Source: Haliotis rufescens
Taxonomy: Eukaryota
Assembly: GCF_023055435.1 (NCBI RefSeq)
Contig: NW_025963957.1
Coordinates: 7,502,001-7,566,000, forward strand
Reading direction: 5' to 3'
Length of the DNA: 64,000 nt
The translations under genes and the position numbers were made by a program. A model generated the notes under the pieces. That model did not search any database, was not told the origin of the DNA, and saw only the letters and a program-made list of their open reading frames with translations. Below are positions 1,865 to 61,520 of the stretch, piece by piece; the first letter of the stretch is position 1, and each line of letters starts with the position of its first letter.

Positions 1865-1896
1865 GCATATATTCTATTCAATTGTTCACCTTAACA

Positions 1897-2660
1897 ATAC
1901 TGGAACACATGGTACACTGGAACACATGGTACACTGGAACACATTGTCACTGGAACACATGGTACACTGGAACACATGGTACACTGGAACACATGGTACA
2001 CTGGAACACATGGTAGACTGGAACACATGGTACACTGGAACACATGGTAGACTGGAACACATGGTACACTGGAACACATGGTACACTGGAACACATGGTA
2101 CACTGGAACACATGGTACACTGGAACACATGGTACACTGGAACACATGGTAGACTGGAACACATGGTACACTGGAACACATGGTACACTGGAACACATGG
2201 TACACTGGAACACATGGTACACTGGAACACATGGTAGACTGGAACACATGGTAGACTGGAACACATGGTACACTGGAACACATGGTACACTGGAACACAT
2301 GGTAGACTGGAACACATGGTACACTGGAACACATGGTACACTGGAACACATGGTAGACTGGAACACATGGTACACTGGAACACATGGTACACTGGGACAC
2401 ATGGTACACTGGAACACATGGTACACTGGAACACATGGTACACTGGAACACATGGTACACTGGAACACATGGTAGACATGGTACACATGGTACACGTGGT
2501 ACAGCTCGACACATGGTACACTGGAACACATGGTACACATGGTACACGGGAACACTGGAACACATGGTACACTGGAACACATGGTACACATGGTACACGT
2601 GGTACACATGGTACAGCTCGACACATGGTACACATGGTACACTGGAACACATGGCACAGC
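1897..2660. repeat. 17-bp minisatellite (tggaacacatggtacac)n
   Basis: Direct tandem copies that degenerate to shorter units at the right end. Confidence 0.97.
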
Positions 2661-3864
2661 TCGACAAAAGATTACAGCGGACAGCATCTGTAGTCACTGA
2701 TTTTTTGTCCAAGTTCTCAATTTAAAAACATTACTCTTAAACAGGCGGATCCCAAAATGTACTTTCTGAAGTTCAATACCTGATCCCTGTATCACTGAAC
2801 GTTTTTCAAACTTTGTCCTCCGTTACTCCAGTTACTCTTACTATTAGTTAGGCCAAACTGTATCATACAAGAGTAATTGTCGCTGCAACAACAAATAAAT
2901 ACACCCAAGTGTGCATGTTTAGTTAAATTATTGATACACAAACAAAACTAGAAAGACAAATTGAAAAACTGGCGGCTCCCTTAACGATTCGGGCGGTAGA
3001 ACCTGCCGCGTGTTCAACTAGTTGGAGGTGAGTTGCACGACATAGCATCAGGACATGCACCGTTCGCAGTTTCGTATCCACTGTGTCATGAAAGCAACGT
3101 AAGTGTGCTATAAACGACTTGCTAAACAATGTCCAAGGAAAGCTACAAGGGAAGTTCAATTACACAGCTACCCGGGTGTGCGCTTGATTAAACATCAAGT
3201 CAGACAAGTCTCCAGTGACGCTACATAAGTTCCAGAAAGGTCGTAAACACGAACGCAGAAAATGAACCTCAATGTTGGATATTGTCGGCAGCAACATGTT
3301 TCCTACTCGTATGCCAGTAAAGAGAGGCGACTAATCACATCACATACATACGGTGCATACATCTCTGACTTCCTCATACCTGTAGCAATTAAATGACCAA
3401 TCTCTCATCATCACTTTTGGTAGTGATTCATAAACACAGGCTCATGAAATATTTGGAATCGTACTATCGTTTCTGAATTGGGCAAAAATTTCCATAAGTA
3501 TAGGGAAATTTCTGTCGTTTTCATTTATTATTTATTATATATTATCATATATTTATTATATGTCACAAACTCTGTGGTGTGAAACCTGCTGGTGGGAACA
3601 AGTAGTGAGAGAAAACGCCTGGTGTTAAACATTAACGTGTTATATTACTTCCAGAGAGCCACTCTTCAAAGTTGTTCAGCACATTTTCTGGGGCAGATTA
3701 TAATGATTAGGATACAAAATACAGAAATCTTGAGATGACGCCATGAGAGACTGATACCACGTGCAGCGGAGACGGTATTTATGATCCGTCCTATCCTTGC
3801 AGTCTCACGGTTAGAATAGACGTCATACAAACATATAGAAACACGCTCATGTTTGGATTGATAC

Positions 3865-4680
3865 TGATTACTAACATTACTCGGTATGAACATACGATTA
3901 ATAACATTACTCAGTATGTATAAACGATTACTAACATTACGCAGTATGTACATACGATTACTTACATTACTCAGTATGTACATACAATTACTTACATTAC
4001 TCAGTATGTACATACAATTACTAACATTACTCAGTATGTACATACGATTACTAACATTACTCAGTATGTACATACGATTACTAACATTACTCAGTATGTA
4101 CATACGATCACTAACATTACTCAGTATGTACATACGATTACCTACATTACTCAGTATGTACATACGATAACTAACATTACTCAGTATGTACATTCGATAA
4201 CTAACATTTCTCACTATGTACATACGATAACTAACATTACTCTCTTTGTACATACGATTACTTACATTACTCACTATGTACATACGATTACTTACATTAC
4301 TCAGTATGTACATACGATTACTTACATTACTCAGTATGTACATACGATCACTAACATTACTCAGTATGTACATACTATTGCTTACATTAATCAGTATGTA
4401 CATACGATAACTAACATTACTCAGTATGTACATACGATTACTAACATTACTCAGTAAGTACATGCGATTACTTACATTACTCAGAAAGTACATACAGTTA
4501 CTTACATTACTCAGTATGTACATACGATTACTTACACTACTCAGTATGTACATACAATTGCTTACATTACTCAGTATGTACATACGATTACTAACATTAC
4601 TCAGTATGTACATACAATTACCTACATTACTCAGTATGTATACGACTACATACGTTACACATTATGTACATACGATTACG
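3865..4680. repeat. 30-bp minisatellite (tacatacgattactaacattactcagtatg)n
   Basis: About 26 tandem copies. The 315-aa ORF is a 10-aa repeat translation. Confidence 0.97.
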
Positions 4681-30030: not shown

Positions 30031-30666
30031 CAGACGAAGCCTTCGTTTGTTGACAAATTCACTTTTATTTGGTTGTGAATATTACACTAATTAGACATCA
30101 CACAGGACATACATCTGATCTTGTATCAAGATTTAAATCATCCCTTACTTGTGTGTTAATATGTTTTTCGTATTTATGAAAATATACCAATTATTGATAA
30201 ATTTGTGTTCCAATGAATAACTGCTAGTGTACTAACACAAATACAAATAATTACTCTGGATGAGGTCATTCCAGTGACCTAGCTGCGAACCGAAAATGTT
30301 AATGTACCTGACGCCATCTTGTTTTCTCCTTGACGGGTCAATGTTCATCACGTGACAGGTCAAAACCGATCATGTTACGAGTCAATATTCGAGGTCAGCG
30401 TCAGTCACACGATTTGGGGGTCTTCATTGAAATGTATTGTTTTGTCCCGTGTTACGGATTAACCAATGGAGTTTCAAGATTCTCAATCTTTAACAACGTG
30501 AAATGATAGAAACGGTTTATATACATGGGAAAGTCTTGAGAACAACTTTATCACTGCAGACCTTCTGACATCACTACCTACCAACTATCGCTACACCAAG
30601 AGTCCGCCTTACAGACAAGGTGCTGAGACTGCTGAACCATCCTTGCTGGATGTCGGGATGAGATGG

Positions 30667-30845
30667 TCAGCCCGCAAACGCGTACTTCGTGTAAGTGATA
30701 ATTGGGTGTTCGCAGACTTTGCAAGCACCGCAACATTTGAGATTTCCCGGGCACTGATAGTCGAAGGTACATTCCGGAGGTTGGCCACACAACACACGGC
30801 CCCGGTGATAGTGATACACAGCGGCTGGGCAGAAGCCTCGTCTCA
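30667..30845 (-). CDS. Secreted repeat/WAP protein, exon 4 of 4: WAP four-disulfide core and stop
   Basis: ctttcag|(V)RRGFCPAAVYHYHRGRVLCGQPPECTFDYQCPGNLKCCGACKVCEHPIITYTKYAFAG*. 8 Cys in WAP spacing; this frame is not in the ORF track. Candidate AATAAA at 30069-30064. Confidence 0.88.
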
Positions 30846-31038
30846 CTGAAAGAGATGAAATATAATTGCAGACAGTGACGTGAACAGTTTACATATTGGT
30901 ATGTCGTGTCATGGTTACAACAGAAATGGAGCGTATTGCTGACCGGTTAAGTCTATTATGCCCAGTTGAATACTTTTTCAGACTGGTCTGATCATGATTT
31001 GTTTATAAATTGGGTTTGTTATCGCCTCCTCTTGTACG

Positions 31039-31204
31039 NNNNNNNNNNNNNNNNNNNNNNNNNNNNNNNNNNNNNNNNNNNNNNNNNNNNNNNNNNNNNN
31101 NNNNNNNNNNNNNNNNNNNNNNNNNNNNNNNNNNNNNNNNNNNNNNNNNNNNNNNNNNNNNNNNNNNNNNNNNNNNNNNNNNNNNNNNNNNNNNNNNNNN
31201 NNNN
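31039..31204. other. Assembly gap (N run) within intron 3 of the WAP gene
   Basis: Run of N. Confidence 1.
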
Positions 31205-31378
31205 CCGGACTGATGCTGATTTATAGTGATAACTGCCAGGGATACCCCACTTAGACACAGTATACTGACTCCGAGCCGATCAGTCCTTGTTTTAGCCCCT
31301 TAACGCCGAGCGGCAGACAGGGTAACAACAAGTGCCATCTTTTAACGCATTTTGGTATGACGATCCCGGGGATCGACG
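31205..31378 (-). mobile_element. SINE fragment (family 3, molluscan-type core)
   Basis: cagtatactgactccgagccgatcagtc..aacgccgagcggcagacagggtaacaacaagtgccatctttt..tggtatgacg..ggggatcga resembles widespread molluscan SINE cores (from memory). Single copy here. Confidence 0.5.
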
Positions 31379-31660
31379 GTTGATTATAATTCAACATGCC
31401 ATCCAACGACTACAACACGTTACATCGAGTGTCCTTTGAATTCACAAACTGAATGACATAGTTTTCTCCAATAGAGGAGTTGTCTGTCAAAGTGGCTGCT
31501 GCGGTGGTTATTAACAACATTCAAGGTGTCAGCTGTAACATGCATGTGGCTATTTTAAAATACGTTAATTTGATGTTAGGCGATTCCGAGAAAGGATCAA
31601 CGCTGACACAACGGAGAAAACAGGTAGTATTTTACTGTAAACAACAGACACATATCTTTG

Positions 31661-32683
31661 TTTATCATATAATGGTTAGGTTTCTCGGCAGGATAAAGCC
31701 AACGGATAAAAACGATATCCGTTGGGGTCATATGCGGATAGAGATGCAAATATCAAAGGTCATGTAGGGATTACTTTCACTGTTTATAAACAAACATGGC
31801 GTCGCCCTCGTCAATCGGCGATCGAGTCAGAATTACCCATCGGGAATGTGGATAAACTACAGAGATAATTGCTTTCATTATCAAAAGAACAGTCTAATAT
31901 ACTGAAAATCAGTGTCTAACTGTGACGTAGCTAAGGCATTTTATAAGTTTTGGCAACTTTGGAGATATAAATTTCGACACAATTTTGCGAGGGCACGAGG
32001 CCTAGCCAAGCGGGATCAGTAGCCATATCTGTGCTTGTAGACCTCTGCGGCTTGAACCTTTCTCCACAATTTAAAATAGTTGGATTTTGCCGAAATATGT
32101 TTTAATTGTTACATTGTTTCGTTTTGTCGCTGTGTGTACATCTGACTACACTTCTTAACGTTATGACAGGACAGACCGACTGTCAACAACGTCCGACCGT
32201 GGCCGCGACGTCTCATAGACTAGGGTTAGAGTAGCTTCCCTTTGACAAAGGGCAGTTACTCAAGCAGACAGACCGATGGATTTCCGCGAAAGGCAATTAA
32301 GAACAATTGTTGTTTTGCGTATATGTTGCTTCGCCACTGTATAAGAAAGAGATTTCAGTTGGAACTATATTGGCTACTGTCACTGTCCAACTGTCACATC
32401 CCTTACCCTGTGACGTAATAAATATTAATGCGCGCATTCCAGGAAAACTCGCAATGTTTCGGTATTGTTTGTGAGAGAGGGAAAGCGATTTTGAAGCAAA
32501 GAATTAAAGAATGACATTATATGATAAAGAGGTTATCACGCTTGTGTGTTTGGGGATGGTAAATATCTTGTATTAGGAATAAACAGTATGTATTTAGCTC
32601 GCCAAGGCTCGCTAAATACAATGTTTATTCCTAATGCAGGATATTTACCATCCCCAAACACACTCGCGTGATAACCTCTTTAT
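31661..32683 (-). mobile_element. Family A hairpin/subTIR element, intact hairpin
   Basis: Reverse complement of 7663-8603. About 160-bp palindrome at 32524-32683, subTIR tttatcatataatg / cattatatgataaa. Confidence 0.88.
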
Positions 32684-32725
32684 ATTGCGTGGAGAATATT
32701 ATATTTCTGTAATCAGTTGAAATAC

Positions 32726-32816
32726 CTTTGGGGACACACTCGGCCTGGGGGGTGCAATACTGGGGTGTCGGACATCTAATGCTGCGACACAGTTGGCCGC
32801 GTGGGCATCGCACATC
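32726..32816 (-). CDS. Secreted repeat/WAP protein, exon 3: Cys-rich module
   Basis: ccttgcag|DVRCPRGQLCRSIRCPTPQYCTPQAECVPK-G|gtattt, phase 0 to 1. Completes a 6-Cys DPC..V.C..G..C (follistatin-N-like) pattern with exon 2. Confidence 0.85.
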
Positions 32817-33330
32817 CTGCAAGGAAAATGCTCAGTGGAGATACTGGGGACTCAACGACTGCTACGAGGATGAAAACATATTCCAAGATGACATCCATGA
32901 TAAACGCGACACGTCCAACCTCTTAAATGAGGTATTGTTAATGTCAAATCTTTAAATTTAAAATAGGCTATGATACAATAAAACATACACACAATCTGAT
33001 CAGATGCATCCATCTATTTATCGAATTGAATAGATGTTGCCTTCGCTTTTCATAATCTCGATACATGGCAAAATGTCATACTTGTGTCAAAATCCTGCTT
33101 GTTTCTTTCGTAAATACTGATATGACATGTAAAGGACAACACAACACAAATATTATAATGCCTATCGTTACACAAGTTACCGAGCCGAAGAAATTCCAAA
33201 TGAATTAATATATCAACGTGTTAAATTTACGAAATTAGACACTTTAGTACACCAACTGAAAACTATAGGAAAAAATAAGTCAATGTTTTTATATCTTATA
33301 AATGTGAATTTGTATCTATGTAACACATAC

Positions 33331-34233
33331 CGCACAGGGATCCGGCTGAGCTGGTCTTTGTCCTGTACCTTGTGCTGGCCTTTGTCTTCTACCTTGTTCT
33401 GGAGCAGGAGGCAGTGGATGTGCTGATCTTTGTCTTATTCCTGGTGCTGGATCTACTGGTAGTCCACTTCCTTGTCCAATTCCTGCTGCTGTGTCTACTG
33501 GTAGTCCACTTTCTTGTCCTATTCCTAGTGCTGGATCTACTGGTAGTCCACTTCCTTGTCCAATTCCTAGTGCTGGATCTACTGGTAGTCCACTTCCTCG
33601 TCCTATTCCTAGTGCTGGGTCTACTGGTAGTCCACTTCCTTGTCCTATTCCTAGTGCTGGGTCTACTGGTAGTCCATTTCCTTGTCCTATTCCTAGTGCT
33701 GGATCTACTGATAGTGCACTTCCTTGTCCTATTCCTAGTGCTGGATCTACTGATCCTTGTCCAATTCCTGGTGCTGGATCTACTGGAAATGCACTTCCTT
33801 GTCCTATTCCTGCTGCTGGATCTACTGGTAGTGCATTTCCTTGTCCTATTCCTGCTGCTGGATCTACTGACAGAACACTTCCTTGTCCTAATGCTAGTGC
33901 TGGGTCTACTGGTAGTGCATTTCCTTGTCCTATCCCGGGTGTTTGATCTAGTGGTAGCGGATGTGCTAGTCCGTGAACTGTGCCTAGTGCTGGATCTTGT
34001 GTCAGTGGCTGTATCTGAGTGTGTGCTGCTGACGGTACTGCAGCCGCTGCTGGTTGTGACGCCGCTGCTGGTGCTGCTGCAAGTGCGACTGGATGTACGT
34101 GTGCCGCTGTGTGTGCAACAAGCAGTGGCTGTCCATATGTAACCATGTGGTCAGCTGGGTGGGTCATCCACCAGTGGTAGGGAACCATCTTAACAAGCAT
34201 CCCATAACTTGTCGCCCACACAGAGGCAAGTAT
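33331..34233 (-). CDS. Secreted repeat/WAP protein, exon 2: end of signal peptide, His/Ala/Pro-rich region, 14-aa Gly/Pro repeats, basic linker
   Basis: cttgcag|ILASVWATSYG...(GIGQGSGLPVDPAL)~13...QPDPCA|gtatgt. 903 nt, phase 0 to 0, open through non-repetitive flanks. Confidence 0.85.
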
Positions 34234-35584
34234 CTGCAAGTCAGGAGAATGACAATGTTATCTAATGAGTGTTTCCAGAATAGTTATCATAGCAATATTT
34301 CTATTAATAGATTAACTTAATTTATATCAGCATGCAATGCTAATTATTTAACTTGAAAAACTACTATTTATAACAGTACTTTGATTGTCGACCTGAGTGT
34401 ATATCACAATACTGCTTGTCACCCTCACCAATCAATCACACCCTTCCGTGTCACTGTCAACAGGTGTTGGGGTGTAGGATATGAAACTCTTATCTTAACT
34501 TTTGATTTGACGGTGACAAGAAAAGATACCAAAATGCTGTCGATCGGTATTTCTTTACCTGATCCAATAATTGGATAACACCATCATTCTTTAAAGTGTA
34601 ATGGACAAAATTTACATGCCATTCTAGAATTTAGAAAATTCCTCCATATACTTTGAATATAAGTGCTATTGTCCATTACAGTATAGAATTCATCACATTG
34701 TTTATTACATAATAGTATTCATTCCATTTTTTGTCGTGACATATGAAACACTTATACACACAACGACAGAGAAACATTGTACAACGAGTGAATCAAGGGG
34801 TTTATATACATTGTGTACGGCATCAAGTTTTCTATTTGTGGATTGGTGATGAAATAACATGGGTAGTTTCCTGTTCTGCCTCCCTTCCAGTGTTACATGA
34901 GAAGTGTTCATGTTCATCCTTTATCTTAAATGTAAACAAGCTTCAGATCAAACTCACATAGAGGTACAGCCACTGTACGGAATGTAACGATGACTCGATA
35001 CACCCAGGAATGGAGTTGAGTTTTCATGGTACTAATGTTGTATTCAAGTAGTATTCTGGCTATAAATAGGGGAACACCGGACATTGAAATACAACGTTGT
35101 ACATATCTGAACGCTTGAACAACTAGACCACCCAACCGATCCTTCTTACATATAGACATATCATAAAACAACTGATGTCTGTGTTTGACAGTAGCCACAA
35201 CTTCTGCTACAGCTAATCAACTCCAACGAAAAAGATGGAATTAAAGTATCAAATTGAAGATCACACCGCCCGACGTCGCCCAAAGATAACCGGTAAATAT
35301 AAAACAATAACGATACACTAACGAAAGGTAACGTGATGTTATTTGCACATCTTCCATGCTAAAGGTGCACCTAAACAATCTTTTCAAATGATTTACAAAG
35401 TTGACTTAAGAATTCACTGACTCTAAATTATGCTTAAACATTAAAACCAGCTGTTGGTTATGATCGGCCTCACCTCTATCGACGTTTAGTTTTGTTTTCA
35501 ACAACCAAAATGAAACATATTCTACATGCTACTGTTGAAAAGACAATGCTGCTACTGACAATAAACTGCTTAACAGACAATATT

Positions 35585-35755
35585 GCTACTTACAAACTAC
35601 AATAGGAAAGACATTGTTCCAACTTACAAACATTCGTAGGAAAGACATTGTTGCCACTTACAAACATTCGTAGGAAAGACATTGTTGCCACTTACAAACA
35701 TCTGTAGGAAAGACATTGTTCCTACTTACAAATAACTGTAGGAAAGACATTGTTG
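35585..35755 (-). repeat. 34-bp minisatellite (5 copies), each containing ATG + 6 codons + gtaagt donor
   Basis: ATGs at 35750, 35716, 35682, 35648 and 35614, each followed 21 nt later by gtaagt. Confidence 0.92.
35730..35750 (-). CDS. Secreted repeat/WAP protein, exon 1 coding part (MSFLQLF)
   Basis: acaATG TCT TTC CTA CAG TTA TTT|gtaagt, phase 0. Joins to give signal peptide MSFLQLFILASVWATSYG. Confidence 0.8.
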
Positions 35756-35806
35756 CTCCTCCGTATAACTGTGTAACCTTGCTCTGATCTCTTGGTTGAC
35801 GTGGTC

Positions 35807-35813
35807 TTTTATA
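35807..35813 (-). promoter_or_regulatory. TATA box of the WAP gene
   Basis: cTATAAAAg 57-63 bp upstream of the ATG at 35750. Confidence 0.7.
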
Positions 35814-36777
35814 GGACCTCCCTCGTAACGCCATACATGACTGGTCCTTCATCGTCCAAGGAGGCCATGTCGTTCATGTTCATGACGAACATTGACACAT
35901 GATGACGAACAGTGACGCGATTGTTTGGGGAGGAGGACATAAAATGTCAATGCATCTTTTTTTATCGGAATAGCTGTCAGTTCGTCTGCCGGCAATGCGA
36001 CCACATAAAGAACTGGCTTGGTACAATCGTAAGGGTGAATGAGATCTGTTCAAGACTTCCGTTTGAAGGGTATACCTTTTAGGTTAGTTAAACATATAAT
36101 TCGTTTGGGAAAGAAAGACGTTTTTTCATCCACTGTGTGTTGCAAATAGTTTTGTATATTTTGTATAGTTTTTTTAATATTTTATATATATCAATGTATA
36201 AATGCAATGCAATAGCAATGCAATATAGCAATATAGCAATATATGTAAATAACAAATGAAATATACCAAATTTATAAAGTGATAAAGTGAAGTCAGTTTT
36301 AAACTTCATTTTGATCTGAATTCAACACTTTATATTTCGTTTTTCACTCGGAAGGTAGGGTTGGGCAGTGGTCGCTGCTATCGTGGTTGAGAATGTTTAC
36401 ACAGATTTAGATAAATAATATTATGTCATGACCTGATTTGCTCCAATGACTTATATTAATGATAAACACGATTAACCTTTGGCGTATACGAGTATATCTT
36501 GAGAGAAAGCAGCAATGGATGACTGTCATGTTGTTTTACTGAACTTGACCTTTGTTGGAAGTATGAGACAGATCGCCAGTAGGTAAACATTGATGCATTG
36601 CTTTTTTATTATAGCTTATCAATTATGTCTCAACGTAGTTTTCAGCATATGCAATAAAGTCGCGGTCAAGTCAGTAAGTGACACGGAAGTCACGCGTGAT
36701 GATCTCATGTAGGGGTTCTCTGTAACTTTCACCCATTACCTGTATCAGGTCATGAGCGAAGGAAGGCGAAAATATTA

Positions 36778-53480: not shown

Positions 53481-55317
53481 AGTTCAAGAGGCAATAGAGA
53501 AGAACAATGAAAAACTGCAAAAACAATCAAAGGTAATTTCAATAAATATTGCATTTCTTTTGAAATATGTATTGTGATGTGTAATATTAGGGTTAGTCAG
53601 CGTTACTTAGGATATGTGTAATGTGGGCAGAGAAACAACCCAACTTCATGAGGTTACTATTTTTGCTTTTATTGTATAGATGCACTGTGATTTTAATTAT
53701 GTTCTCATATTCTTTACATTTTCTTTCTTTACTTTCAGATCACTCTGACAAAGCACCGAAGACAAGCGTTAGTATCAGAACAATAAAGAAGGAGCAGCAA
53801 GTTTTGCTGAAATGAACATATTTTTTGTCTAAGCTATGTGGCTGAGATATTGCCGAGGATTGCATTGCAGGAGTTTTGTAATGTGTATGTTTTTGTTTCT
53901 TAGTAAAGCTGTGTATTTAGAATTATATATATATATATACATATAAAAGATGAGATGAGATGTGCACAATGAAATTTATGAAACAATATATGCAGTTATA
54001 TTGTAAAATCTTGGTTGTGTTCTATTTTTTTCCATGTCTGAAGTTAACCTACTTTCAGAGTACCGTATATCACATGTAGGTTGTTTCTTTGAATTCCAAC
54101 TGGGGATTATATATTTGGTTGGCCCCATGGAATAATTATGAAATTTATTTTTTGAGAATCACATTCACCTTTACTGTTGTACACTTCAAAGTCGTAAAAA
54201 GGCCATTGAAAAATGGTCACTGAAATTCTCATAATAATTTAGATTAAATATAGGGTAAGCTCAAGGTTCAATGATTTGCATCTGTCTAGTATACAAAGGT
54301 ATGAGGCCAACATGTTGTTCCATTGTTTAATTCGAGTGACGTCAACTTTTCTTGATAAATTTGGTAAATATAATACCAAGATAAATATCTTCAATTGCTG
54401 AAATCAATTTAAACTCTCCAAAGATTGATGGTTGATATTACTGCAGAAAAAAATTCTGCCAGAAATTTCTGTAGAAAAAAAAAATTCTGCCAGAAATTTC
54501 TGTAAAAAAAAAAAATACTGCCAGAAATTTCTGCAGAAAAAAAAAATTCTGCCAGAAATTTCTGCAGTAATGCATTTTCTCAGCCAATTTTTGAGCTTGT
54601 GAACATGTGAACACACTGGGACACACATTATTTGGATTCGACTCCTCGAGAGCTTTCCAATGATATAAAACATGTTTTTGTAGCTCGCTTCCTTCTGTGT
54701 GGTCAAGTTCGGACTCCTGGCCATTCCTAAGTTGTCCCGCCCTGCCTTAGCGTAAAGAACACATTTTGCACGAGGTCCGAGTCTATATAGTCAGTGTAGT
54801 ATGGGGCTGCTCAATCGTCAAGGCAACACCCTTTGCTGTGCGTCCCTTTCGCATAACAGAAACCCACCACCATGGGCTCATCGCCACGACATCTGCAACT
54901 TTAATAACCGATCTACTGATGAAGATATCCATTTGTGTTCTCATGATGGTCACAAGCAAGAGCATTTGTAACCAGAACAAGTGTTTTGTTTAGACATTTG
55001 CTAAACAGTTGTTGCCACACAACATCAAATCAGAGGATATTCTAATTACGATTGATTGACGTTTATTCTGAATCGGGGACGCTAAGACACGGGTACACAA
55101 CGTGAGACTTCCCTTCTGTTTCCGGAACAGCAAAATGTTTTAATCGGAACTCGGTCAGTCAGGATGAATTTGCATCGTAACTTTCCTGTTAGGCCAGATT
55201 TAGTTGAATTCCCACAGAACAATTCCAATTTTGCGTGCTTTCGGCTTACTCAAAATATCGCTTTCTGTCTAAATCGTCATGATTAGTCCAGAAAAGGAGT
55301 GTCGTCTATTCGTGTTA

Positions 55318-57195
55318 CATGGCCAAACAGAGGATACATCACATCGTATACTCGTGATACACGGACACACAGAGGATACATCACATCGTATACTCGTGAT
55401 ACACGGACACACAGAGGGTACATCACATCATATTCTCGTGATACACGGACATACAGAGGATACATCACATCGTATACTCGTGATACCCGGACACACATAG
55501 GATACATCACATCGTATACTCGTGATACACGGACACACAGAGGATACATCACATCGTATACTCGGGGTACATGGCCACACAGAGGATACATCACTGTGTA
55601 TACTCGTGATACACGGACACACAGAGGATACATCACATCGAATACTCGTGATACACGGACACACAGAGGATACATCACATCGTATACTCGTGATACACGG
55701 ACACACAGAGGATACATCACATCGTATACTCGTGATACACGGACACACAGAGGATACATCACATCGTATACTCGTGGTACATGGCCACACAGAGGATACA
55801 TCACTCTGTATACTCGTGATACACGGACACACAGAGGATACATCACATCGTATACTCGGGGTACATGGCCACACAGAAGATACATCACATCGTATACTCG
55901 TGATACACGGACACACAGAGGATACATCACATCGTATACTCGTGGTACATGGCCACACAGAGGATATATCACATCGTATACTCGTGGTACATGGCCACAC
56001 AGAGGATACATCACTCTGTATACTCGTGATACACGGACATACAGAAGGTACGTCACATCGTATACTCGTGATACACGGACATACCGAAGGTACGTCACAT
56101 CGTATACTCGTGATACACGGACACACAGAGGATACATCACATCGTATACTCGTGATACACGGACACACAGAGGATACATCACATCGTATACTCGGGGTAC
56201 ATGGCCACACAGAGGATACATCACATCGTATACTCGTGATACACGGACATACAGAAGGTACGTCACATCGTATACTCGTGATACACGGACATACAGAAGG
56301 TACGTCACATCGTATACTCGTGATACACGGACACACAGAAGATACATCACATCGTATACTCGTGATACACGGCCACACAGAGGATACATCACATCGTATA
56401 CTCGTGGTACATGGCCACACAGAGGATACATCACATCGTATACTCGTGATACACGGACATACAGAAGGTACGTCACATCGTATACTCGTGATACACGGAC
56501 ACACAGAAGATACATCACATCGTATACTCGTGATACACGGACACACAGAGGATATATCACATCGTATACTCGTGGTACATGGCCACACAGAGGATACATC
56601 ACATCGTATACTCGTGATACACGGACATACAGAAGGTACGTCACATCGTATACTCGGATTACATGGCCACACGAAGGGTACATCATATTCTATCCTCGGG
56701 GTACACAAACACACAGAGGGTACACCACCTCGTATACTCGGGGTACACGGACACACGAAGGGCACATCACATCGTATACTCGGATTACATGGCCACACGA
56801 AGGGTACATCACATCGTATACTCGGGGTACACGGCCACACGGAGGGTACATCACATCGTATACTCAGGATACATGGCCACACAGAGGATATACTACATCG
56901 GATACTCGGGGTACACGAACACACATAAGGTAGGTACATCACATCGTATACTCGGGGTACACAAACACACAGAGGGTACATCACATCGTACAGTCGGGAC
57001 ACGAAGACACACAGAGGGTACATCACATCGTTTACTCGGATTACATGACACCAGGAAGGGTACATCACATCGTATATATGGGGTACACGGCCCCACGGAG
57101 GGTACATCACATCTCATACTCGGATTACATGGCCACAAGAAGGGTACATCACATCGTATACTCGGGGTACACGGTCACACCGACGGTACATCACG
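55318..57195. repeat. 42-bp minisatellite (acacacagaggatacatcacatcgtatactcgtgatacacgg)n
   Basis: About 44 copies, diverging at the right end. Open in several frames on both strands. Confidence 0.96.
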
Positions 57196-57509
57196 TTGTG
57201 TAGTCAAACCAGTTCTTTGACAAGAACCCATCCTCGACAGCGTCGGACAGATCCTGAAGCCGGGACGGAGCTGTCCTTCTATGATGTCAGCGCTGGGGAA
57301 CCTCCAACCTGTTTTGATCGGACTCATTCCTTAAAATATCCTGGCCAAAGTACTAATATCGAGGTAGGATACTCTTTCCCGCCTCAGCTTTCACAAATAT
57401 GTATTTAATGATTCAACAAGTGCACAAGATGTGTAAATGTTCATCTTAGGCCTCCACTGTTACACCAAAACTGTACTCAAGGTAGATTTGGTAAATGATA
57501 TGAGTGCAG

Positions 57510-59697: not shown

Positions 59698-60045
59698 TGA
59701 GTAAATCGTGCTGCGCAATTCATTCATCCATGGATCCATTCACTTATGATGCTTGTAACTCGACTCGTAGAAATATCCTCCTATTTCAGTTACTCCAAAC
59801 GTGTATAACTGAGCAGGAATAGAATGTCACCGAAATTATTGTTTCGTTATGCATGTTAAATGAATTGAGAATTAAATATTGATAAAACAAAGTATTTTCC
59901 AAGAGTTACAACATTCAAGGCCTCAGTGAAGCTGTCAAAAGGTTTCATGGCAGACATATGGAGGTAATTTCCAAATCTAGCGCATCAGTGGCAAACATGA
60001 CGTCTGTTGCGATTTCCTATTTAACGATATGTTCCCATGTACCCC

Positions 60046-60916
60046 TACTGGGATGTTGTCTGTGGTGTGACCTGGCTCTTGTACTGGGATGTTGTCTGTA
60101 GTGTGACCTGGCTCTTGTACTGGGATGTTGTCTGTAGTGTGACCTGGCTCTTGTACTGGGATGTTGTCTGTAGTGTGACCTGGCTCTTGTACTGGGATGT
60201 TGTCTGTAGTGTGACCTGGCTCTTGTACTGGGATGTTGTCTGTAGTGTGACCTGGCTCTTGTACTGGGATGTTGTCTGTAGTGTGACCTGGCTCTTGTAC
60301 TGGGATGTTGTCTGTAGTGTGACCTGGCTCTTGTACTGGGATGTTGTCTGTACTGTGACCTGGCTCTTGTACTGGGATGTTGTCTGTAGTGTGACCTGGC
60401 TCTTGTACTGGGATGTTGTCTGTAGTGTGACCTGGCTCTTGTACTGGGATGTTGTCTGTAGTGTGACCTGGCTCTTGTACTGGGATGTTGTCTGTAGTGT
60501 GACCTGGCTCTTGTACTGGGATGTTGTCTGTAGTGTGACCTGGCTCTTGTACTGGGATGTTGTCTGTAGTGTGACCTGGCTCTTGTACTGGGATGTTGTC
60601 TGTAGTGTGACCTGGCTCTTGTACTGGGATGTTGTCTGTAGTGTGACCTGGCTCTTGTACTGGGATGTTGTCTGTAGTGTGACCTGGCTCTTGTACTGGG
60701 ATGTTGTCTGTAGTGTGACCTGGCTCTTGTACTGGGATGTTGTCTGTGGTGTGACCTGGCTCTTGTACTGGGATGTTGTCTGTAGTGTGACCTGGCTCTT
60801 GTACTGGGATGTTGTCTGTAGTGTGACCTGGCTCTTGTACTGGGATGTTGTCTGTAGTGTGACCTGGCTCTTGTACTGGGATGTTGTCTGTAGTGTGACC
60901 TGGCTCTTGTACTGGG
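60046..60916. repeat. 36-bp minisatellite (tactgggatgttgtctgtagtgtgacctggctcttg) x24
   Basis: Near-perfect tandem copies. Confidence 0.97.
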
Positions 60917-61520
60917 CTGAAGGGAAACAAACTCCCTAGAGGCTGTAGCTCGACATTGACAGATGATGACAGTTTGGTTGATTTCTTCTAAAGAAATATT
61001 AATATGATTTATTTCCGTCCCTGGCAGAGTACGAATGGTCGTCACTTTTGATAGTTTTTAATGTGCTGTGGAATGATTGACATCAGATTGAATTAACTGA
61101 GAATGAATAGTGGACTCGACTGTGTGAATGTATAGGGATGCATCAGTGGAGATTATCAACGTCCAATTGATGGCTGGACAAATAATTGTCTACATATGTA
61201 ATATGTAAGTGGCTAGACGTATTACAACGTGTTCTGATTGGTCGGTATGACGTTGAATGTGGAAATGCTGCCTGTTATGATTCTACACCTACAAAGAGGT
61301 GTGGCAGATGTTGTAGACTTCAGATCAGACGCGGCATGTTAGTGGTATTCGTGAGTGTACGTTGCTATGAATGTGTCCATGGCTCGTGTAGGTATTGTGT
61401 ATCAATAGCCCTGGCTCCTTTACGTGTTATGTTCAGCGTCATTTCTCAACGGGTGCCACCAGTAAGAAGGATACGCTCACCGCCTAGACTTCCAGTTGTC
61501 GGGCTTTCGTTTTTTGTGGA

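What the first reader, a model, noticed from the sequence alone, without database searches (positions are those of the whole stretch)
30667..35813. Complete 397-aa secreted modular protein: Gly/Pro elastomer-like repeats, Cys module and WAP inhibitor domain (lustrin-like design)
Seen: TATA, then four exons with matching phases (35750-35730, 34233-33331, 32816-32726, 30845-30667). They encode a signal peptide, a His/Trp/Met-rich start (VPYHWWMTHPADH), an Ala/Pro tract, ~13 copies of GIGQGSGLPVDPAL, a basic RQRPAQG linker, a 6-Cys module and an 8-Cys WAP domain. The ORF track misses the WAP frame. Known: abalone lustrin A combines Cys-rich, Pro-rich, Gly/Ser-rich, basic and C-terminal WAP domains, and perlwapin is a WAP shell protein. 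Inference: a shell-matrix, mucus or adhesive protein pairing an extensible repeat with protease protection. I do not recognise this repeat from a named protein. The N gap in intron 3 could hide an extra exon.
Basis: partly seen in the sequence, partly recalled or inferred. Interest (0 to 1): 0.8.

Follow-up and report, generated by a model that had tools for sequence, protein, structure and literature searches.

The report
Secreted repeat-plus-WAP protein beside abalone lustrin
A real, spliced abalone gene encodes a 397-residue secreted protein that joins about a dozen novel 14-residue Gly/Pro/Asp repeats to a small cysteine module and a protease-inhibitor-type WAP domain. It sits in the same gene row as the nacre proteins lustrin and perlwapin, but where it is made and what it does are untested.

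Summary
Transcript contigs from three runs join the exons exactly at those borders. The assembly gap lies inside intron 3, and the transcript crosses that intron with no extra letters.

- **WAP domain:** the last exon passes Pfam WAP (29 bits, cut-off 20.8) and models as a WAP fold.
- **Novel parts:** the repeat exon, the 6-Cys module and this WAP variant each occur once in the genome. No relative turned up in protein searches or in the papers searched.
- **Family membership:** it is not a crustin (no second Cys-Cys pair), not a trappin and not a lustrin homologue (no Lustrin_cystein domain).
- **New context:** the gene ends a same-strand row holding a lustrin-type gene, two perlwapin-like three-WAP genes and another divergent terminal WAP exon.

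Best reading: a matrix-tethered WAP protein of the shell or an epithelial secretion. The function is inferred, and the tissue of expression is unknown. This is a new variant of a known design, of moderate interest.

The first-exon minisatellite was noted before on this same window (s1-812822).

The parts
35806..35813 (-). TATA-like motif upstream of exon 1. Its role as the promoter is unproven.
   Evidence: Read. A contig in X3 extends to 35801, only 5 nt downstream, so the start site is at or upstream of 35801.
35730..35801 (-). Exon 1 as seen in RNA: 5' UTR of at least 51 nt plus 7 coding codons (35750-35730) for the start of the signal peptide.
   Evidence: joint 34233|35730 in X3, 72 letters on the exon-1 side.
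35575..35757 (-). 34-bp minisatellite. About five copies each carry an ATG, 21 nt and a GT donor. Copy 1 is the annotated exon 1, and the copy-2 donor (exon end 35696) is also used.
   Evidence: TRF. Joint 34233|35696 in X2.
33331..34233 (-). Exon 2 (301 codons). It holds the rest of the signal peptide, a His/Trp/Met-rich stretch, an Ala/Pro tract, the repeat array, a basic Arg/Gln/Pro linker and the first Cys of the Cys module.
   Evidence: RNA contigs cover 33330-33473 and 33764-34216.
33442..33936 (-). Array of 12 copies of a 14-aa unit (consensus GIGQGSGLPVDPAL). Composition: Gly 24%, Pro 13%, Ala 12%, one Asp and one Gln per unit, no Lys, Cys or aromatic residues.
32726..32816 (-). Exon 3 (91 nt, ends in phase 1). 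It carries five Cys, which with the last Cys of exon 2 form a 6-Cys module spaced x4, x5, x4, x5, x5.
   Evidence: No Pfam, NCBIfam or PDB match. Unique in the genome.
31039..31204 (.). Assembly gap inside intron 3. It was not filled or looked up.
   Evidence: The transcript joins 30845 to 32726 directly.
30667..30845 (-). Exon 4: a phase-1 acceptor, a WAP four-disulfide-core domain (Cys1 to Cys8 at 30831-30712), a 14-aa tail and the stop codon.
   Evidence: Pfam PF00095 at 29.0 bits against 20.8. Alignment A1. Model and Foldseek matches.
30051..30666 (-). 3' UTR of about 615 nt, with AATAAA at 30069-30064.
   Evidence: Contigs of 1029 and 1033 nt run about 400 nt beyond 30450. The signal was read.

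Best explanation
This is a genuine, single-copy, transcribed and polyadenylated abalone gene for a 397-aa secreted modular protein. In order it holds:
- a signal peptide;
- a His/aromatic-rich N-terminal piece and an Ala/Pro tract;
- twelve acidic Gly/Pro/Asp/Gln 14-mers with no confident fold;
- an Arg-rich linker;
- a 14-Cys C-terminal head, made of a novel 6-Cys module and a divergent WAP domain.

I think it most likely works as a matrix-tethered WAP protein of the lustrin/perlwapin gene row. The long low-complexity part would act as a flexible, hydrated spacer that embeds in, or is cross-linked to, an extracellular matrix. That matrix could be the shell organic matrix or an epithelial secretion. 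The disulfide-knotted head would do the specific job: protease inhibition, or binding of mineral or microbes.

Shown: the exon structure, splicing, polyadenylation signal, WAP membership, uniqueness in the genome and linkage to the lustrin-type locus. Inferred: secretion, disorder of the repeats, tethering, and any inhibitory, antimicrobial or mineral activity.
For: Splice joints at every predicted border in three runs, with no letters between E3 and E4. AATAAA sits 13-17 nt before the contig ends.

The WAP domain is above Pfam's gathering score. It keeps all 8 Cys, the conserved Asp and the CPG..KCC core when aligned with 36 WAP domains of the same genome. The model matches omwaprin, SLPI, elafin and nawaprin at Foldseek probability 0.51-0.99.

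An even count of 14 Cys allows full disulfide pairing. The hydrophobic start with Ser at -3 and Gly at -1 fits a signal peptide (read by eye). The repeat exon gives only a low-confidence model, pLDDT 48.

Same-strand row on contig C179: a lustrin-type gene (Lustrin_cystein exons with the NVNCT motif, a GS-domain exon and a terminal WAP exon), two three-WAP genes, and a divergent terminal WAP exon sharing the rare x5...x2,x2 Cys spacing. The lustrin features are as described in PMC5850307.

Every terminal WAP exon I inspected has a phase-1 acceptor, which fits exon shuffling.
Against: - No tissue or condition information: run names are coded and all rows are labelled only 'RNA?'.
- The WAP loops are atypical: spacing 13,5,5,5,0,2,2 against the genome's usual 8-10,3,5,5,0,3,3. 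Inhibitory function and specificity cannot be read off.
- The repeats have no Lys, so they could only be the Gln side of a transglutaminase cross-link.
- The Gly and Pro content is just below the elastomer range as I recall it from Rauscher et al. 2006 (own knowledge).
- Differences among repeat copies show no coding bias: 9 synonymous against 17 non-synonymous.
- Linkage to lustrin does not prove co-expression.
- Translation has not been shown.
Confidence: 0.55

Rival explanations
1. A crustin-like humoral or mucosal antimicrobial effector. It would be a convergent mollusc counterpart of type II crustins, in which the Cys module plus WAP kills or binds bacteria and the Gly-rich repeats are a variable spacer.
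For: The order of parts matches type II crustins: signal peptide, tandem Gly-rich repeats, a Cys-rich region and a single C-terminal WAP (PMC9680087). The C-terminal exons are basic, with net about +3 and +4. The closest structural match is the antibacterial snake WAP omwaprin.
Against: The crustin signature needs 12 Cys with two Cys-Cys pairs (PMC10363340). Here the pre-WAP module has six single Cys and no Cys-Cys pair. The repeats are acidic and only 24% Gly, against above 30% by one crustin scheme (PMC9680087) and about 50% by the same group's figures (PMC10363340); my count is. The whole protein is about neutral to slightly acidic. No infection-induced expression data are available.
Confidence: 0.2
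2. A structural, calcium-responsive repeat protein of nacre, a 'mini-lustrin'. The 14-mers would fold into a regular beta-solenoid or roll, or act as an entropic spring, and would set mechanical or crystal-growth properties. The WAP would be a mineral-binding or crystal-growth-inhibiting module, as reported for perlwapin.
For: The AlphaFold model places one short strand per 14-aa unit with strict periodicity. There is one Asp per unit. The gene is linked to lustrin- and perlwapin-type genes. Perlwapin is reported to inhibit CaCO3 crystal growth (reference list of PMC6003135).
Against: The model's pLDDT is only 50-59 in the repeats and comes from a single sequence. No match to any calcium-binding repeat family appears in Pfam at E up to 10. 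The protein is not reported in the abalone shell proteomes I read, although trypsin would hardly cut the repeats.
Confidence: 0.15
3. A young, lineage-restricted transcript without a settled protein function. A minisatellite-derived exon happened to be spliced onto a duplicated terminal WAP exon. It is transcribed but poorly translated or not translated.
For: No relative of the repeat exon or the Cys module was found anywhere. All frames of the repeat are open. There is no synonymous excess among copies. The first exon is itself a minisatellite, and an alternative donor puts an out-of-frame upstream ATG ahead of the ORF.
Against: About 230 non-repeat codons stay open across four exons with matching phases; the chance is about 1e-5 by (61/64)^230. 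A good signal peptide, an even Cys count and an intact WAP core are all kept. Expression reaches a contig depth of about 200 in one run. Parts of exon 2 are held by runs of four other organism labels.
Confidence: 0.1

Closest known systems
Lustrin A (Haliotis rufescens nacre matrix protein)
   Same: A secreted modular protein with Cys-rich, Pro-rich and Gly-rich low-complexity parts, a basic stretch and a C-terminal WAP-type domain encoded by a terminal exon. Its probable gene lies about 90 kb away on the same strand (PMC5850307).
   Different: Lustrin A is about 1428 aa, with ten Lustrin_cystein domains, eight Pro-rich domains and a Gly/Ser domain. This protein is 397 aa and has no Lustrin_cystein match. 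Its Cys module is a different 6-Cys type, its repeat is an unrelated Gly/Pro/Asp/Gln 14-mer, and its WAP is divergent.
Type II crustins (crustacean antimicrobial WAP proteins)
   Same: [quoted passage not shown]
   Different: The crustin signature of 12 Cys with two Cys-Cys pairs is not met. The repeats here are 14-mers with 24% Gly and one Asp each, not tetra- or pentapeptides. The repeat region is acidic. The host is a mollusc. No sequence relationship beyond the WAP fold was seen.
Trappins / pre-elafin (mammalian anchored elastase inhibitors)
   Same: N-terminal short tandem repeats containing Gly-Gln and Pro-Val, followed by one C-terminal WAP. This is the functional idea of an inhibitor tethered to matrix (PMC2831891).
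   Different: Trappin repeats are hexamers (KGQDPV) with both Lys and Gln, they lie on the same exon as the WAP, and the family is eutherian-specific. Here the units are 14-mers without Lys, on a separate exon, with an extra Cys module. Transglutaminase use is untested.
Perlwapin (abalone nacre protein of three WAP domains)
   Same: An abalone secreted WAP protein. Two perlwapin-like three-WAP genes lie 57-73 kb away in the same row.
   Different: Perlwapin is made of WAP domains only. This protein has one divergent WAP and about 340 residues of non-WAP sequence.

Membership tests
WAP / four-disulfide core (Pfam PF00095) | Profile score at or above Pfam's gathering threshold | tested here: met
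   29.0 bits against 20.8, E 1.3e-6, profile positions 2-41 of 41.
WAP / four-disulfide core (Pfam PF00095) | Eight Cys in the pattern C..C..C-x5-C-x5-CC..C..C, with the CP start and the conserved Asp | tested here: met
   All 8 Cys, P6, D28 and CPG..KCC align with 36 WAP domains of the same genome. The loop lengths are unusual: 13,5 and 2,2.
WAP / four-disulfide core (Pfam PF00095) | WAP fold | tested here: met
   The AF2 model has pLDDT 72.7. Top PDB matches are omwaprin, SLPI, elafin and nawaprin, with TM-score 0.53-0.60 normalised by my model's length and 0.59-0.72 normalised by the matched chain's length. The test is partly circular, because the alignment consisted of WAP domains.
WAP / four-disulfide core (Pfam PF00095) | Protease-inhibitory loop of the elafin/SLPI type | tested here: inconclusive
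   phmmer aligns the loop to SLPI only weakly (E 0.44), and Cys2 is displaced. No activity can be inferred.
Crustin (types I/II) | 12-Cys signature: a 4-Cys region ending in a Cys-Cys pair plus the 8-Cys WAP, giving two Cys-Cys pairs | tested here: not met
   The pre-WAP module has six single Cys and no Cys-Cys pair, so the protein has only one such pair. The criterion is from PMC10363340 and PMC9680087.
Crustin (type II) | Gly-rich N-terminal domain of tandem tetra- or pentapeptides, Gly above about 30% | tested here: not met
   Tandem repeats are present, but as 14-mers with 24% Gly.
Crustin (type II) | [quoted passage not shown] | tested here: met
   The signal peptide was judged by eye only.
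Trappin | Transglutaminase-substrate domain of KGQDPV-type hexapeptide repeats with Lys and Gln | tested here: not met
   The units are 14 aa, with Gln but no Lys. The definition is from PMC2831891.
Trappin | Repeats and WAP encoded on one exon; eutherian distribution | tested here: not met
   The repeats, the Cys module and the WAP lie on three exons. The host is a mollusc.
Lustrin family | Lustrin_cystein domains (Pfam PF14625; NVNCT-type C domains) | tested here: not met
   No exon matches in the full Pfam scan at E up to 10. The same model finds 16 exons elsewhere in this genome, 11 of them on this contig and none in the gene.
Lustrin family | Gly/Ser-rich 'GS' domain | tested here: not met
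   The repeats are Gly/Pro/Ala/Leu/Asp/Gln, with Ser at 7%. A true GS exon is seen in the neighbouring gene.
Lustrin family | C-terminal WAP-type domain on a terminal exon | tested here: met
   Pairwise similarity to the lustrin-type gene's WAP is only generic: 46% over 26 aa.
Perlwapin | Three consecutive WAP domains and little else | tested here: not met
   There is one WAP only.

The most novel reading that the evidence does not exclude
An unannotated, abalone-restricted member of the lustrin/perlwapin nacre locus. It would have been built recently by splicing a minisatellite-born repeat exon and a new 6-Cys exon onto a duplicated phase-1 terminal WAP exon. It would act in the shell matrix as a compact extensible or calcium-responsive tether with a protective or crystal-modulating WAP head. 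It would have been missed by shell proteomics because trypsin cannot cut its repeats.
Probability: 0.2. Interest if true: 0.6.

Novelty: new variant of a known kind. Interest (0 to 1): 0.4.

Why it matters
It adds a compact, experimentally tractable member to the row of genes that encodes the classic abalone nacre proteins lustrin and perlwapin. It is a clean example of how shell or secretory proteins are assembled: a repeat exon born from a minisatellite, a small new Cys module and a shuffled WAP exon.

The layout 'repeat spacer, then Cys region, then terminal WAP' has now arisen separately in crustaceans (crustins), mammals (trappins) and abalone. That recurrence suggests a general solution for placing a small disulfide-knotted effector in a matrix.

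If the protein is in nacre, its near lack of tryptic sites would explain why proteomics missed it. Its 165-residue repeat region would also be a convenient model for testing elastomeric or calcium-dependent behaviour.

Tried and rejected
- **Word-index protein searches.** Exon 2 and its first 104 residues gave no hit. A control with a neighbouring perlwapin-like piece also gave nothing, so blanks from this tool are weak evidence for abalone proteins.
- **Exhaustive HMMER search with the WAP exon.** It returned only three hits, all translated satellites. There is therefore no close orthologue in that library, but a 58-aa query cannot reach distant WAPs at library-wide E-values.
- **Own-genome search with exon 2.** It gave 130 other hits. 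Those I opened were unrelated periodic satellites, so I rejected them as paralogues.
- **Full-text searches.** Nine peptide strings from the protein found nothing.
- **Family and structure libraries.** NCBIfam and PDB sequence searches gave nothing meaningful for exons 2 and 3. A weak resemblance of exon 3 to the chicken eggshell-membrane Cys-rich module (E 5.3) is at chance level.
- **Rfam and tRNA scans of the gene region.** Nothing found.
- **Tree of 39 WAP domains.** It was unresolved and does not place this WAP with its neighbour.


Full report

Yes. On the minus strand the four proposed exons read exactly as described.
- E1 (35750-35730) encodes seven residues and is followed by GTAAGT.
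- E2 (34233-33331) follows a ...TTGCAG acceptor and encodes 301 residues.
- E3 (32816-32726) is 91 nt and ends in phase 1.
- E4 (30845-30667) follows ...TTTCAG, completes the split codon and runs to a TGA.

The lengths sum to 1194 nt, which is 397 codons plus the stop. Outside the repeats about 230 codons stay open across four exons. By (61/64)^230 that has a chance of roughly 1e-5.

**2. The gap and the splicing.**

I tested this first, as asked. Exon 2 was used to find runs, and four of them were laid on 30450-35900. Contigs in X1, X2 and X3 (one study, organism A) carry three joints: 30845|32726, 32815/6|33330/1 and 34233|35730. Each is flanked by CT..AC on the + strand, which is GT..AG on the gene strand.

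One contig of 1029 nt (depth about 207 in X1) holds 143 nt of E2, then 91 nt, then E4 and 3' UTR. Nothing lies between E3 and E4, so the gap (31039-31204) is purely intronic in this transcript. Introns 1 and 2 have essentially zero depth, so the runs labelled 'RNA?' do behave as RNA. The depth inside intron 3 comes from mismatched copies of repeated elements.

The contigs run about 400 nt past 30450 and end 13-17 nt after an AATAAA at 30069-30064.

**3. The 5' end.**

A TATA-like motif sits at 35813-35806, but an X3 contig reaches 35801. The start site is therefore at or upstream of that base, and the TATA is not proven to be the promoter.

Exon 1 is one unit of a 34-bp minisatellite with about five copies (already noted on this window as s1-812822). 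New here: a contig in X2 uses the donor of the second copy (joint 34233|35696). In that isoform the first ATG is out of frame, because 34 is not a multiple of 3, and its reading frame stops 14 codons into exon 2. The main ORF would then have to start at the second copy's ATG.

**4. What the protein is made of.**

E1 plus the first 11 residues of E2 form an uncharged, hydrophobic stretch ending in Ser at -3 and Gly at -1. This is a typical signal peptide by the -3/-1 rule. I read it by eye, because no predictor was available.

After the signal peptide the parts follow in this order:
- A His/Trp/Met/Tyr-rich stretch.
- An Ala/Pro tract.
- A degenerate repeat copy.
- Twelve clear copies of a 14-aa unit with consensus GIGQGSGLPVDPAL. 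Two copies are shortened to 13 and 11 residues.
- A second degenerate copy.
- An Arg/Gln/Pro-rich basic linker.

The repeat region is 24% Gly, 13% Pro and 12% Ala. Each unit has one Asp and one Gln and carries no Lys, Cys or aromatic residue, so its net charge is about -1.

AlphaFold on E2 alone gives no confident fold (mean pLDDT 48). It does draw one short strand per unit at pLDDT 50-59, which is at best a hint.

The last Cys of E2 plus five Cys in E3 form a 6-Cys module spaced x4, x5, x4, x5, x5. It matches nothing in Pfam, NCBIfam or the PDB.

E4 is a WAP domain.
- Pfam PF00095 scores 29.0 bits against a cut-off of 20.8.
- All eight Cys, the CP start, the conserved Asp and the CPG..KCC core align with 36 other WAP domains of this genome.
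- A model with pLDDT 72.7 matches omwaprin, SLPI, elafin and nawaprin best.

It is an outlier within the family. Its Cys spacing is 13,5,5,5,0,2,2, against the genome's usual 8-10,3,5,5,0,3,3. The alignment to the SLPI inhibitory loop is weak, with Cys2 displaced. Protease specificity, or even inhibitory activity, cannot be inferred from it.

**5. Relatives.**

Each of E2, E3 and E4 is single-copy in the 1.33-Gb genome. The other E2 hits are periodic satellites.

Outside the genome I found no relative.
- Word-index searches with E2 and with its non-repetitive start found nothing.
- The exhaustive search with the WAP exon returned only translated satellites.
- Nine peptide strings are absent from the paper library.

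Two cautions apply. A control search with a neighbouring perlwapin-like piece also found nothing, so these blanks are weak evidence. And the joined protein was not searched, by instruction.

Runs labelled with four other organisms hold 5-28% of exon 2's 31-mers. Close relatives probably carry the gene, but I had no further read-laying run to check this.

**6. Surroundings.**

The window itself is mostly satellites and transposons and holds no other WAP-like frame.

Pfam searches of the whole genome show that contig C179 is a hot spot. It carries 11 of the 16 Lustrin_cystein exon hits and 12 of the 51 WAP hits.

Reading the minus strand from high to low coordinates, the row runs as follows:
- **A lustrin-type gene, about 7,672-7,627 kb.** It has Lustrin_cystein exons with the NVNCT motif, a Pro-rich repeat exon, a Gly/Ser exon of 202 or more residues, and a terminal WAP exon. 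These are the hallmarks of lustrin A as summarised in PMC5850307.
- **Two nearly identical three-WAP, perlwapin-like genes,** at 7,610 kb and 7,595 kb.
- **A divergent terminal WAP exon at 7,573 kb.** It has a phase-1 acceptor, a stop and an AATAAA. It shares this gene's rare x5...x2,x2 spacing and is its best pairwise match (42% over 33 residues, E 2e-8).
- **A lone Lustrin_cystein exon at 7,567 kb,** 1.1 kb beyond the window's end.
- **This gene, at 7,537.8-7,532.05 kb.**

A tree of 39 WAP domains is unresolved. The kinship with the 7,573-kb exon therefore rests on spacing and pairwise score only. The three terminal WAP exons I inspected all begin in phase 1, as expected for shuffled WAP exons.

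Notes by other agents call this genome red abalone. I did not verify the species, but the lustrin-type gene fits an abalone.

**7. How it most likely works.**

Shown: a spliced, polyadenylated mRNA for a protein with a signal-peptide-like start, a long low-complexity acidic repeat, a basic linker and a 14-Cys head ending in a true WAP domain, encoded at the end of the lustrin/perlwapin row.

Inferred: the protein is secreted, the repeat region is a flexible, hydrated spacer that embeds in or is cross-linked to an extracellular matrix, and the disulfide-knotted head does the specific work.

I put about 0.55 on this 'matrix-tethered WAP protein' reading. Because of linkage, I favour shell matrix somewhat over an epithelial or mucus setting.

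The rivals, with my confidence in each:
- A crustin-like antimicrobial effector (0.2).
- A calcium-responsive structural 'mini-lustrin' whose repeats fold regularly (0.15).
- A young transcript without a settled protein function (0.1).

'Elastomer-like' is possible but not demonstrated. As I recall the Gly/Pro criterion of Rauscher et al. 2006 (own knowledge), the unit falls just below the elastomer range.

**8. Comparison with what is known.**

In layout and size the closest designs are type II crustins (PMC9680087), which run signal peptide, tandem Gly-rich repeats, Cys-rich region and one C-terminal WAP, and trappins (PMC2831891), which run short Gln-containing repeats and then a WAP.

Membership fails for both.
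- The crustin signature needs 12 Cys with two Cys-Cys pairs (PMC10363340); this protein has only one such pair and six single Cys.
- Trappin repeats are Lys/Gln hexamers on the same exon as the WAP, in eutherians only.

Lustrin A shares the design and the locus but none of its defining modules. Perlwapin is made of WAP domains only.

The protein is a bona fide WAP-domain protein and a new variant of the 'repeat spacer plus terminal WAP' kind. It is not a new kind of system.

**9. Verdict.**

The gene is real and apparently undescribed, and it is nicely placed next to lustrin. But WAP shuffling onto low-complexity repeats is a familiar theme in mollusc secretomes, and the function is untested.

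Orthologous loci and sample metadata could therefore not be obtained.

Noticed in passing
window 35575-35757: Exon 1 is one unit of a 34-bp minisatellite whose copies each carry an ATG and a GT donor. RNA contigs use the donors of both copy 1 (35730) and copy 2 (35696). The copy-2 isoform places an out-of-frame upstream ATG ahead of the ORF.
   Followed up: partly
window 31205-31359 (beside the N gap): A short element next to the gap has an enormous summed contig depth (16,000-53,000) in all four runs, with shared loose ends pointing into the gap. It is probably a very abundant SINE-like repeat and the reason for the gap. There is no Rfam or tRNA match.
   Followed up: partly
window 32536-32671 (intron 3): A near-perfect palindrome: mirror-image ORFs on both strands give the same peptide. 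Several runs show contigs that skip 31753-32604 with 6 extra letters, as expected of transposon copy variants.
   Followed up: no
L044 7269-7421 (G000:C179:7573269-7573421, minus): A terminal WAP exon with a phase-1 acceptor, a stop and an AATAAA. It shares this gene's rare Cys spacing (9,5,5,5,0,2,2). Its upstream exons were not found within 16 kb, and a 29-aa-period satellite lies just upstream.
   Followed up: partly
L044 1076-1243 (G000:C179:7567076-7567243, minus; 1.1 kb beyond the window's right end): A lone Lustrin_cystein (PF14625) exon lies between the divergent WAP exon and this gene. I could not tell which gene it belongs to, or whether it is ever spliced to this gene.
   Followed up: no
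L012, L045-L048 (G000:C179:7627431-7672302, minus): A probable lustrin A gene. It has Lustrin_cystein exons with the NVNCT motif (three tandem copies 1622 bp apart), a Pro-rich GYATPLPGYPTPLPGY-type repeat exon, a Gly/Ser exon of 202 or more residues and a terminal WAP exon. About 4.4 kb of satellite with every frame open lies just upstream of the WAP exon.
   Followed up: partly
L010 4357-5261 and L011 5036-5585 (G000:C179:7594357-7595261 and 7610036-7610585, minus): Two nearly identical three-WAP, perlwapin-like genes in tandem, 15.7 kb apart.
   Followed up: partly
window 1886-2712, 3666-4613, 55283-57220, 59977-61045: Long satellites whose repeats keep several reading frames open on both strands. 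They produce 250-560-aa 'ORFs' that are not genes.
   Followed up: no
G000:C445:40960295-40964326: A 1410-aa open frame holding several WAP domains, with more WAP exons nearby at 41.02-41.15 Mb. This is a second large WAP locus in the genome.
   Followed up: no
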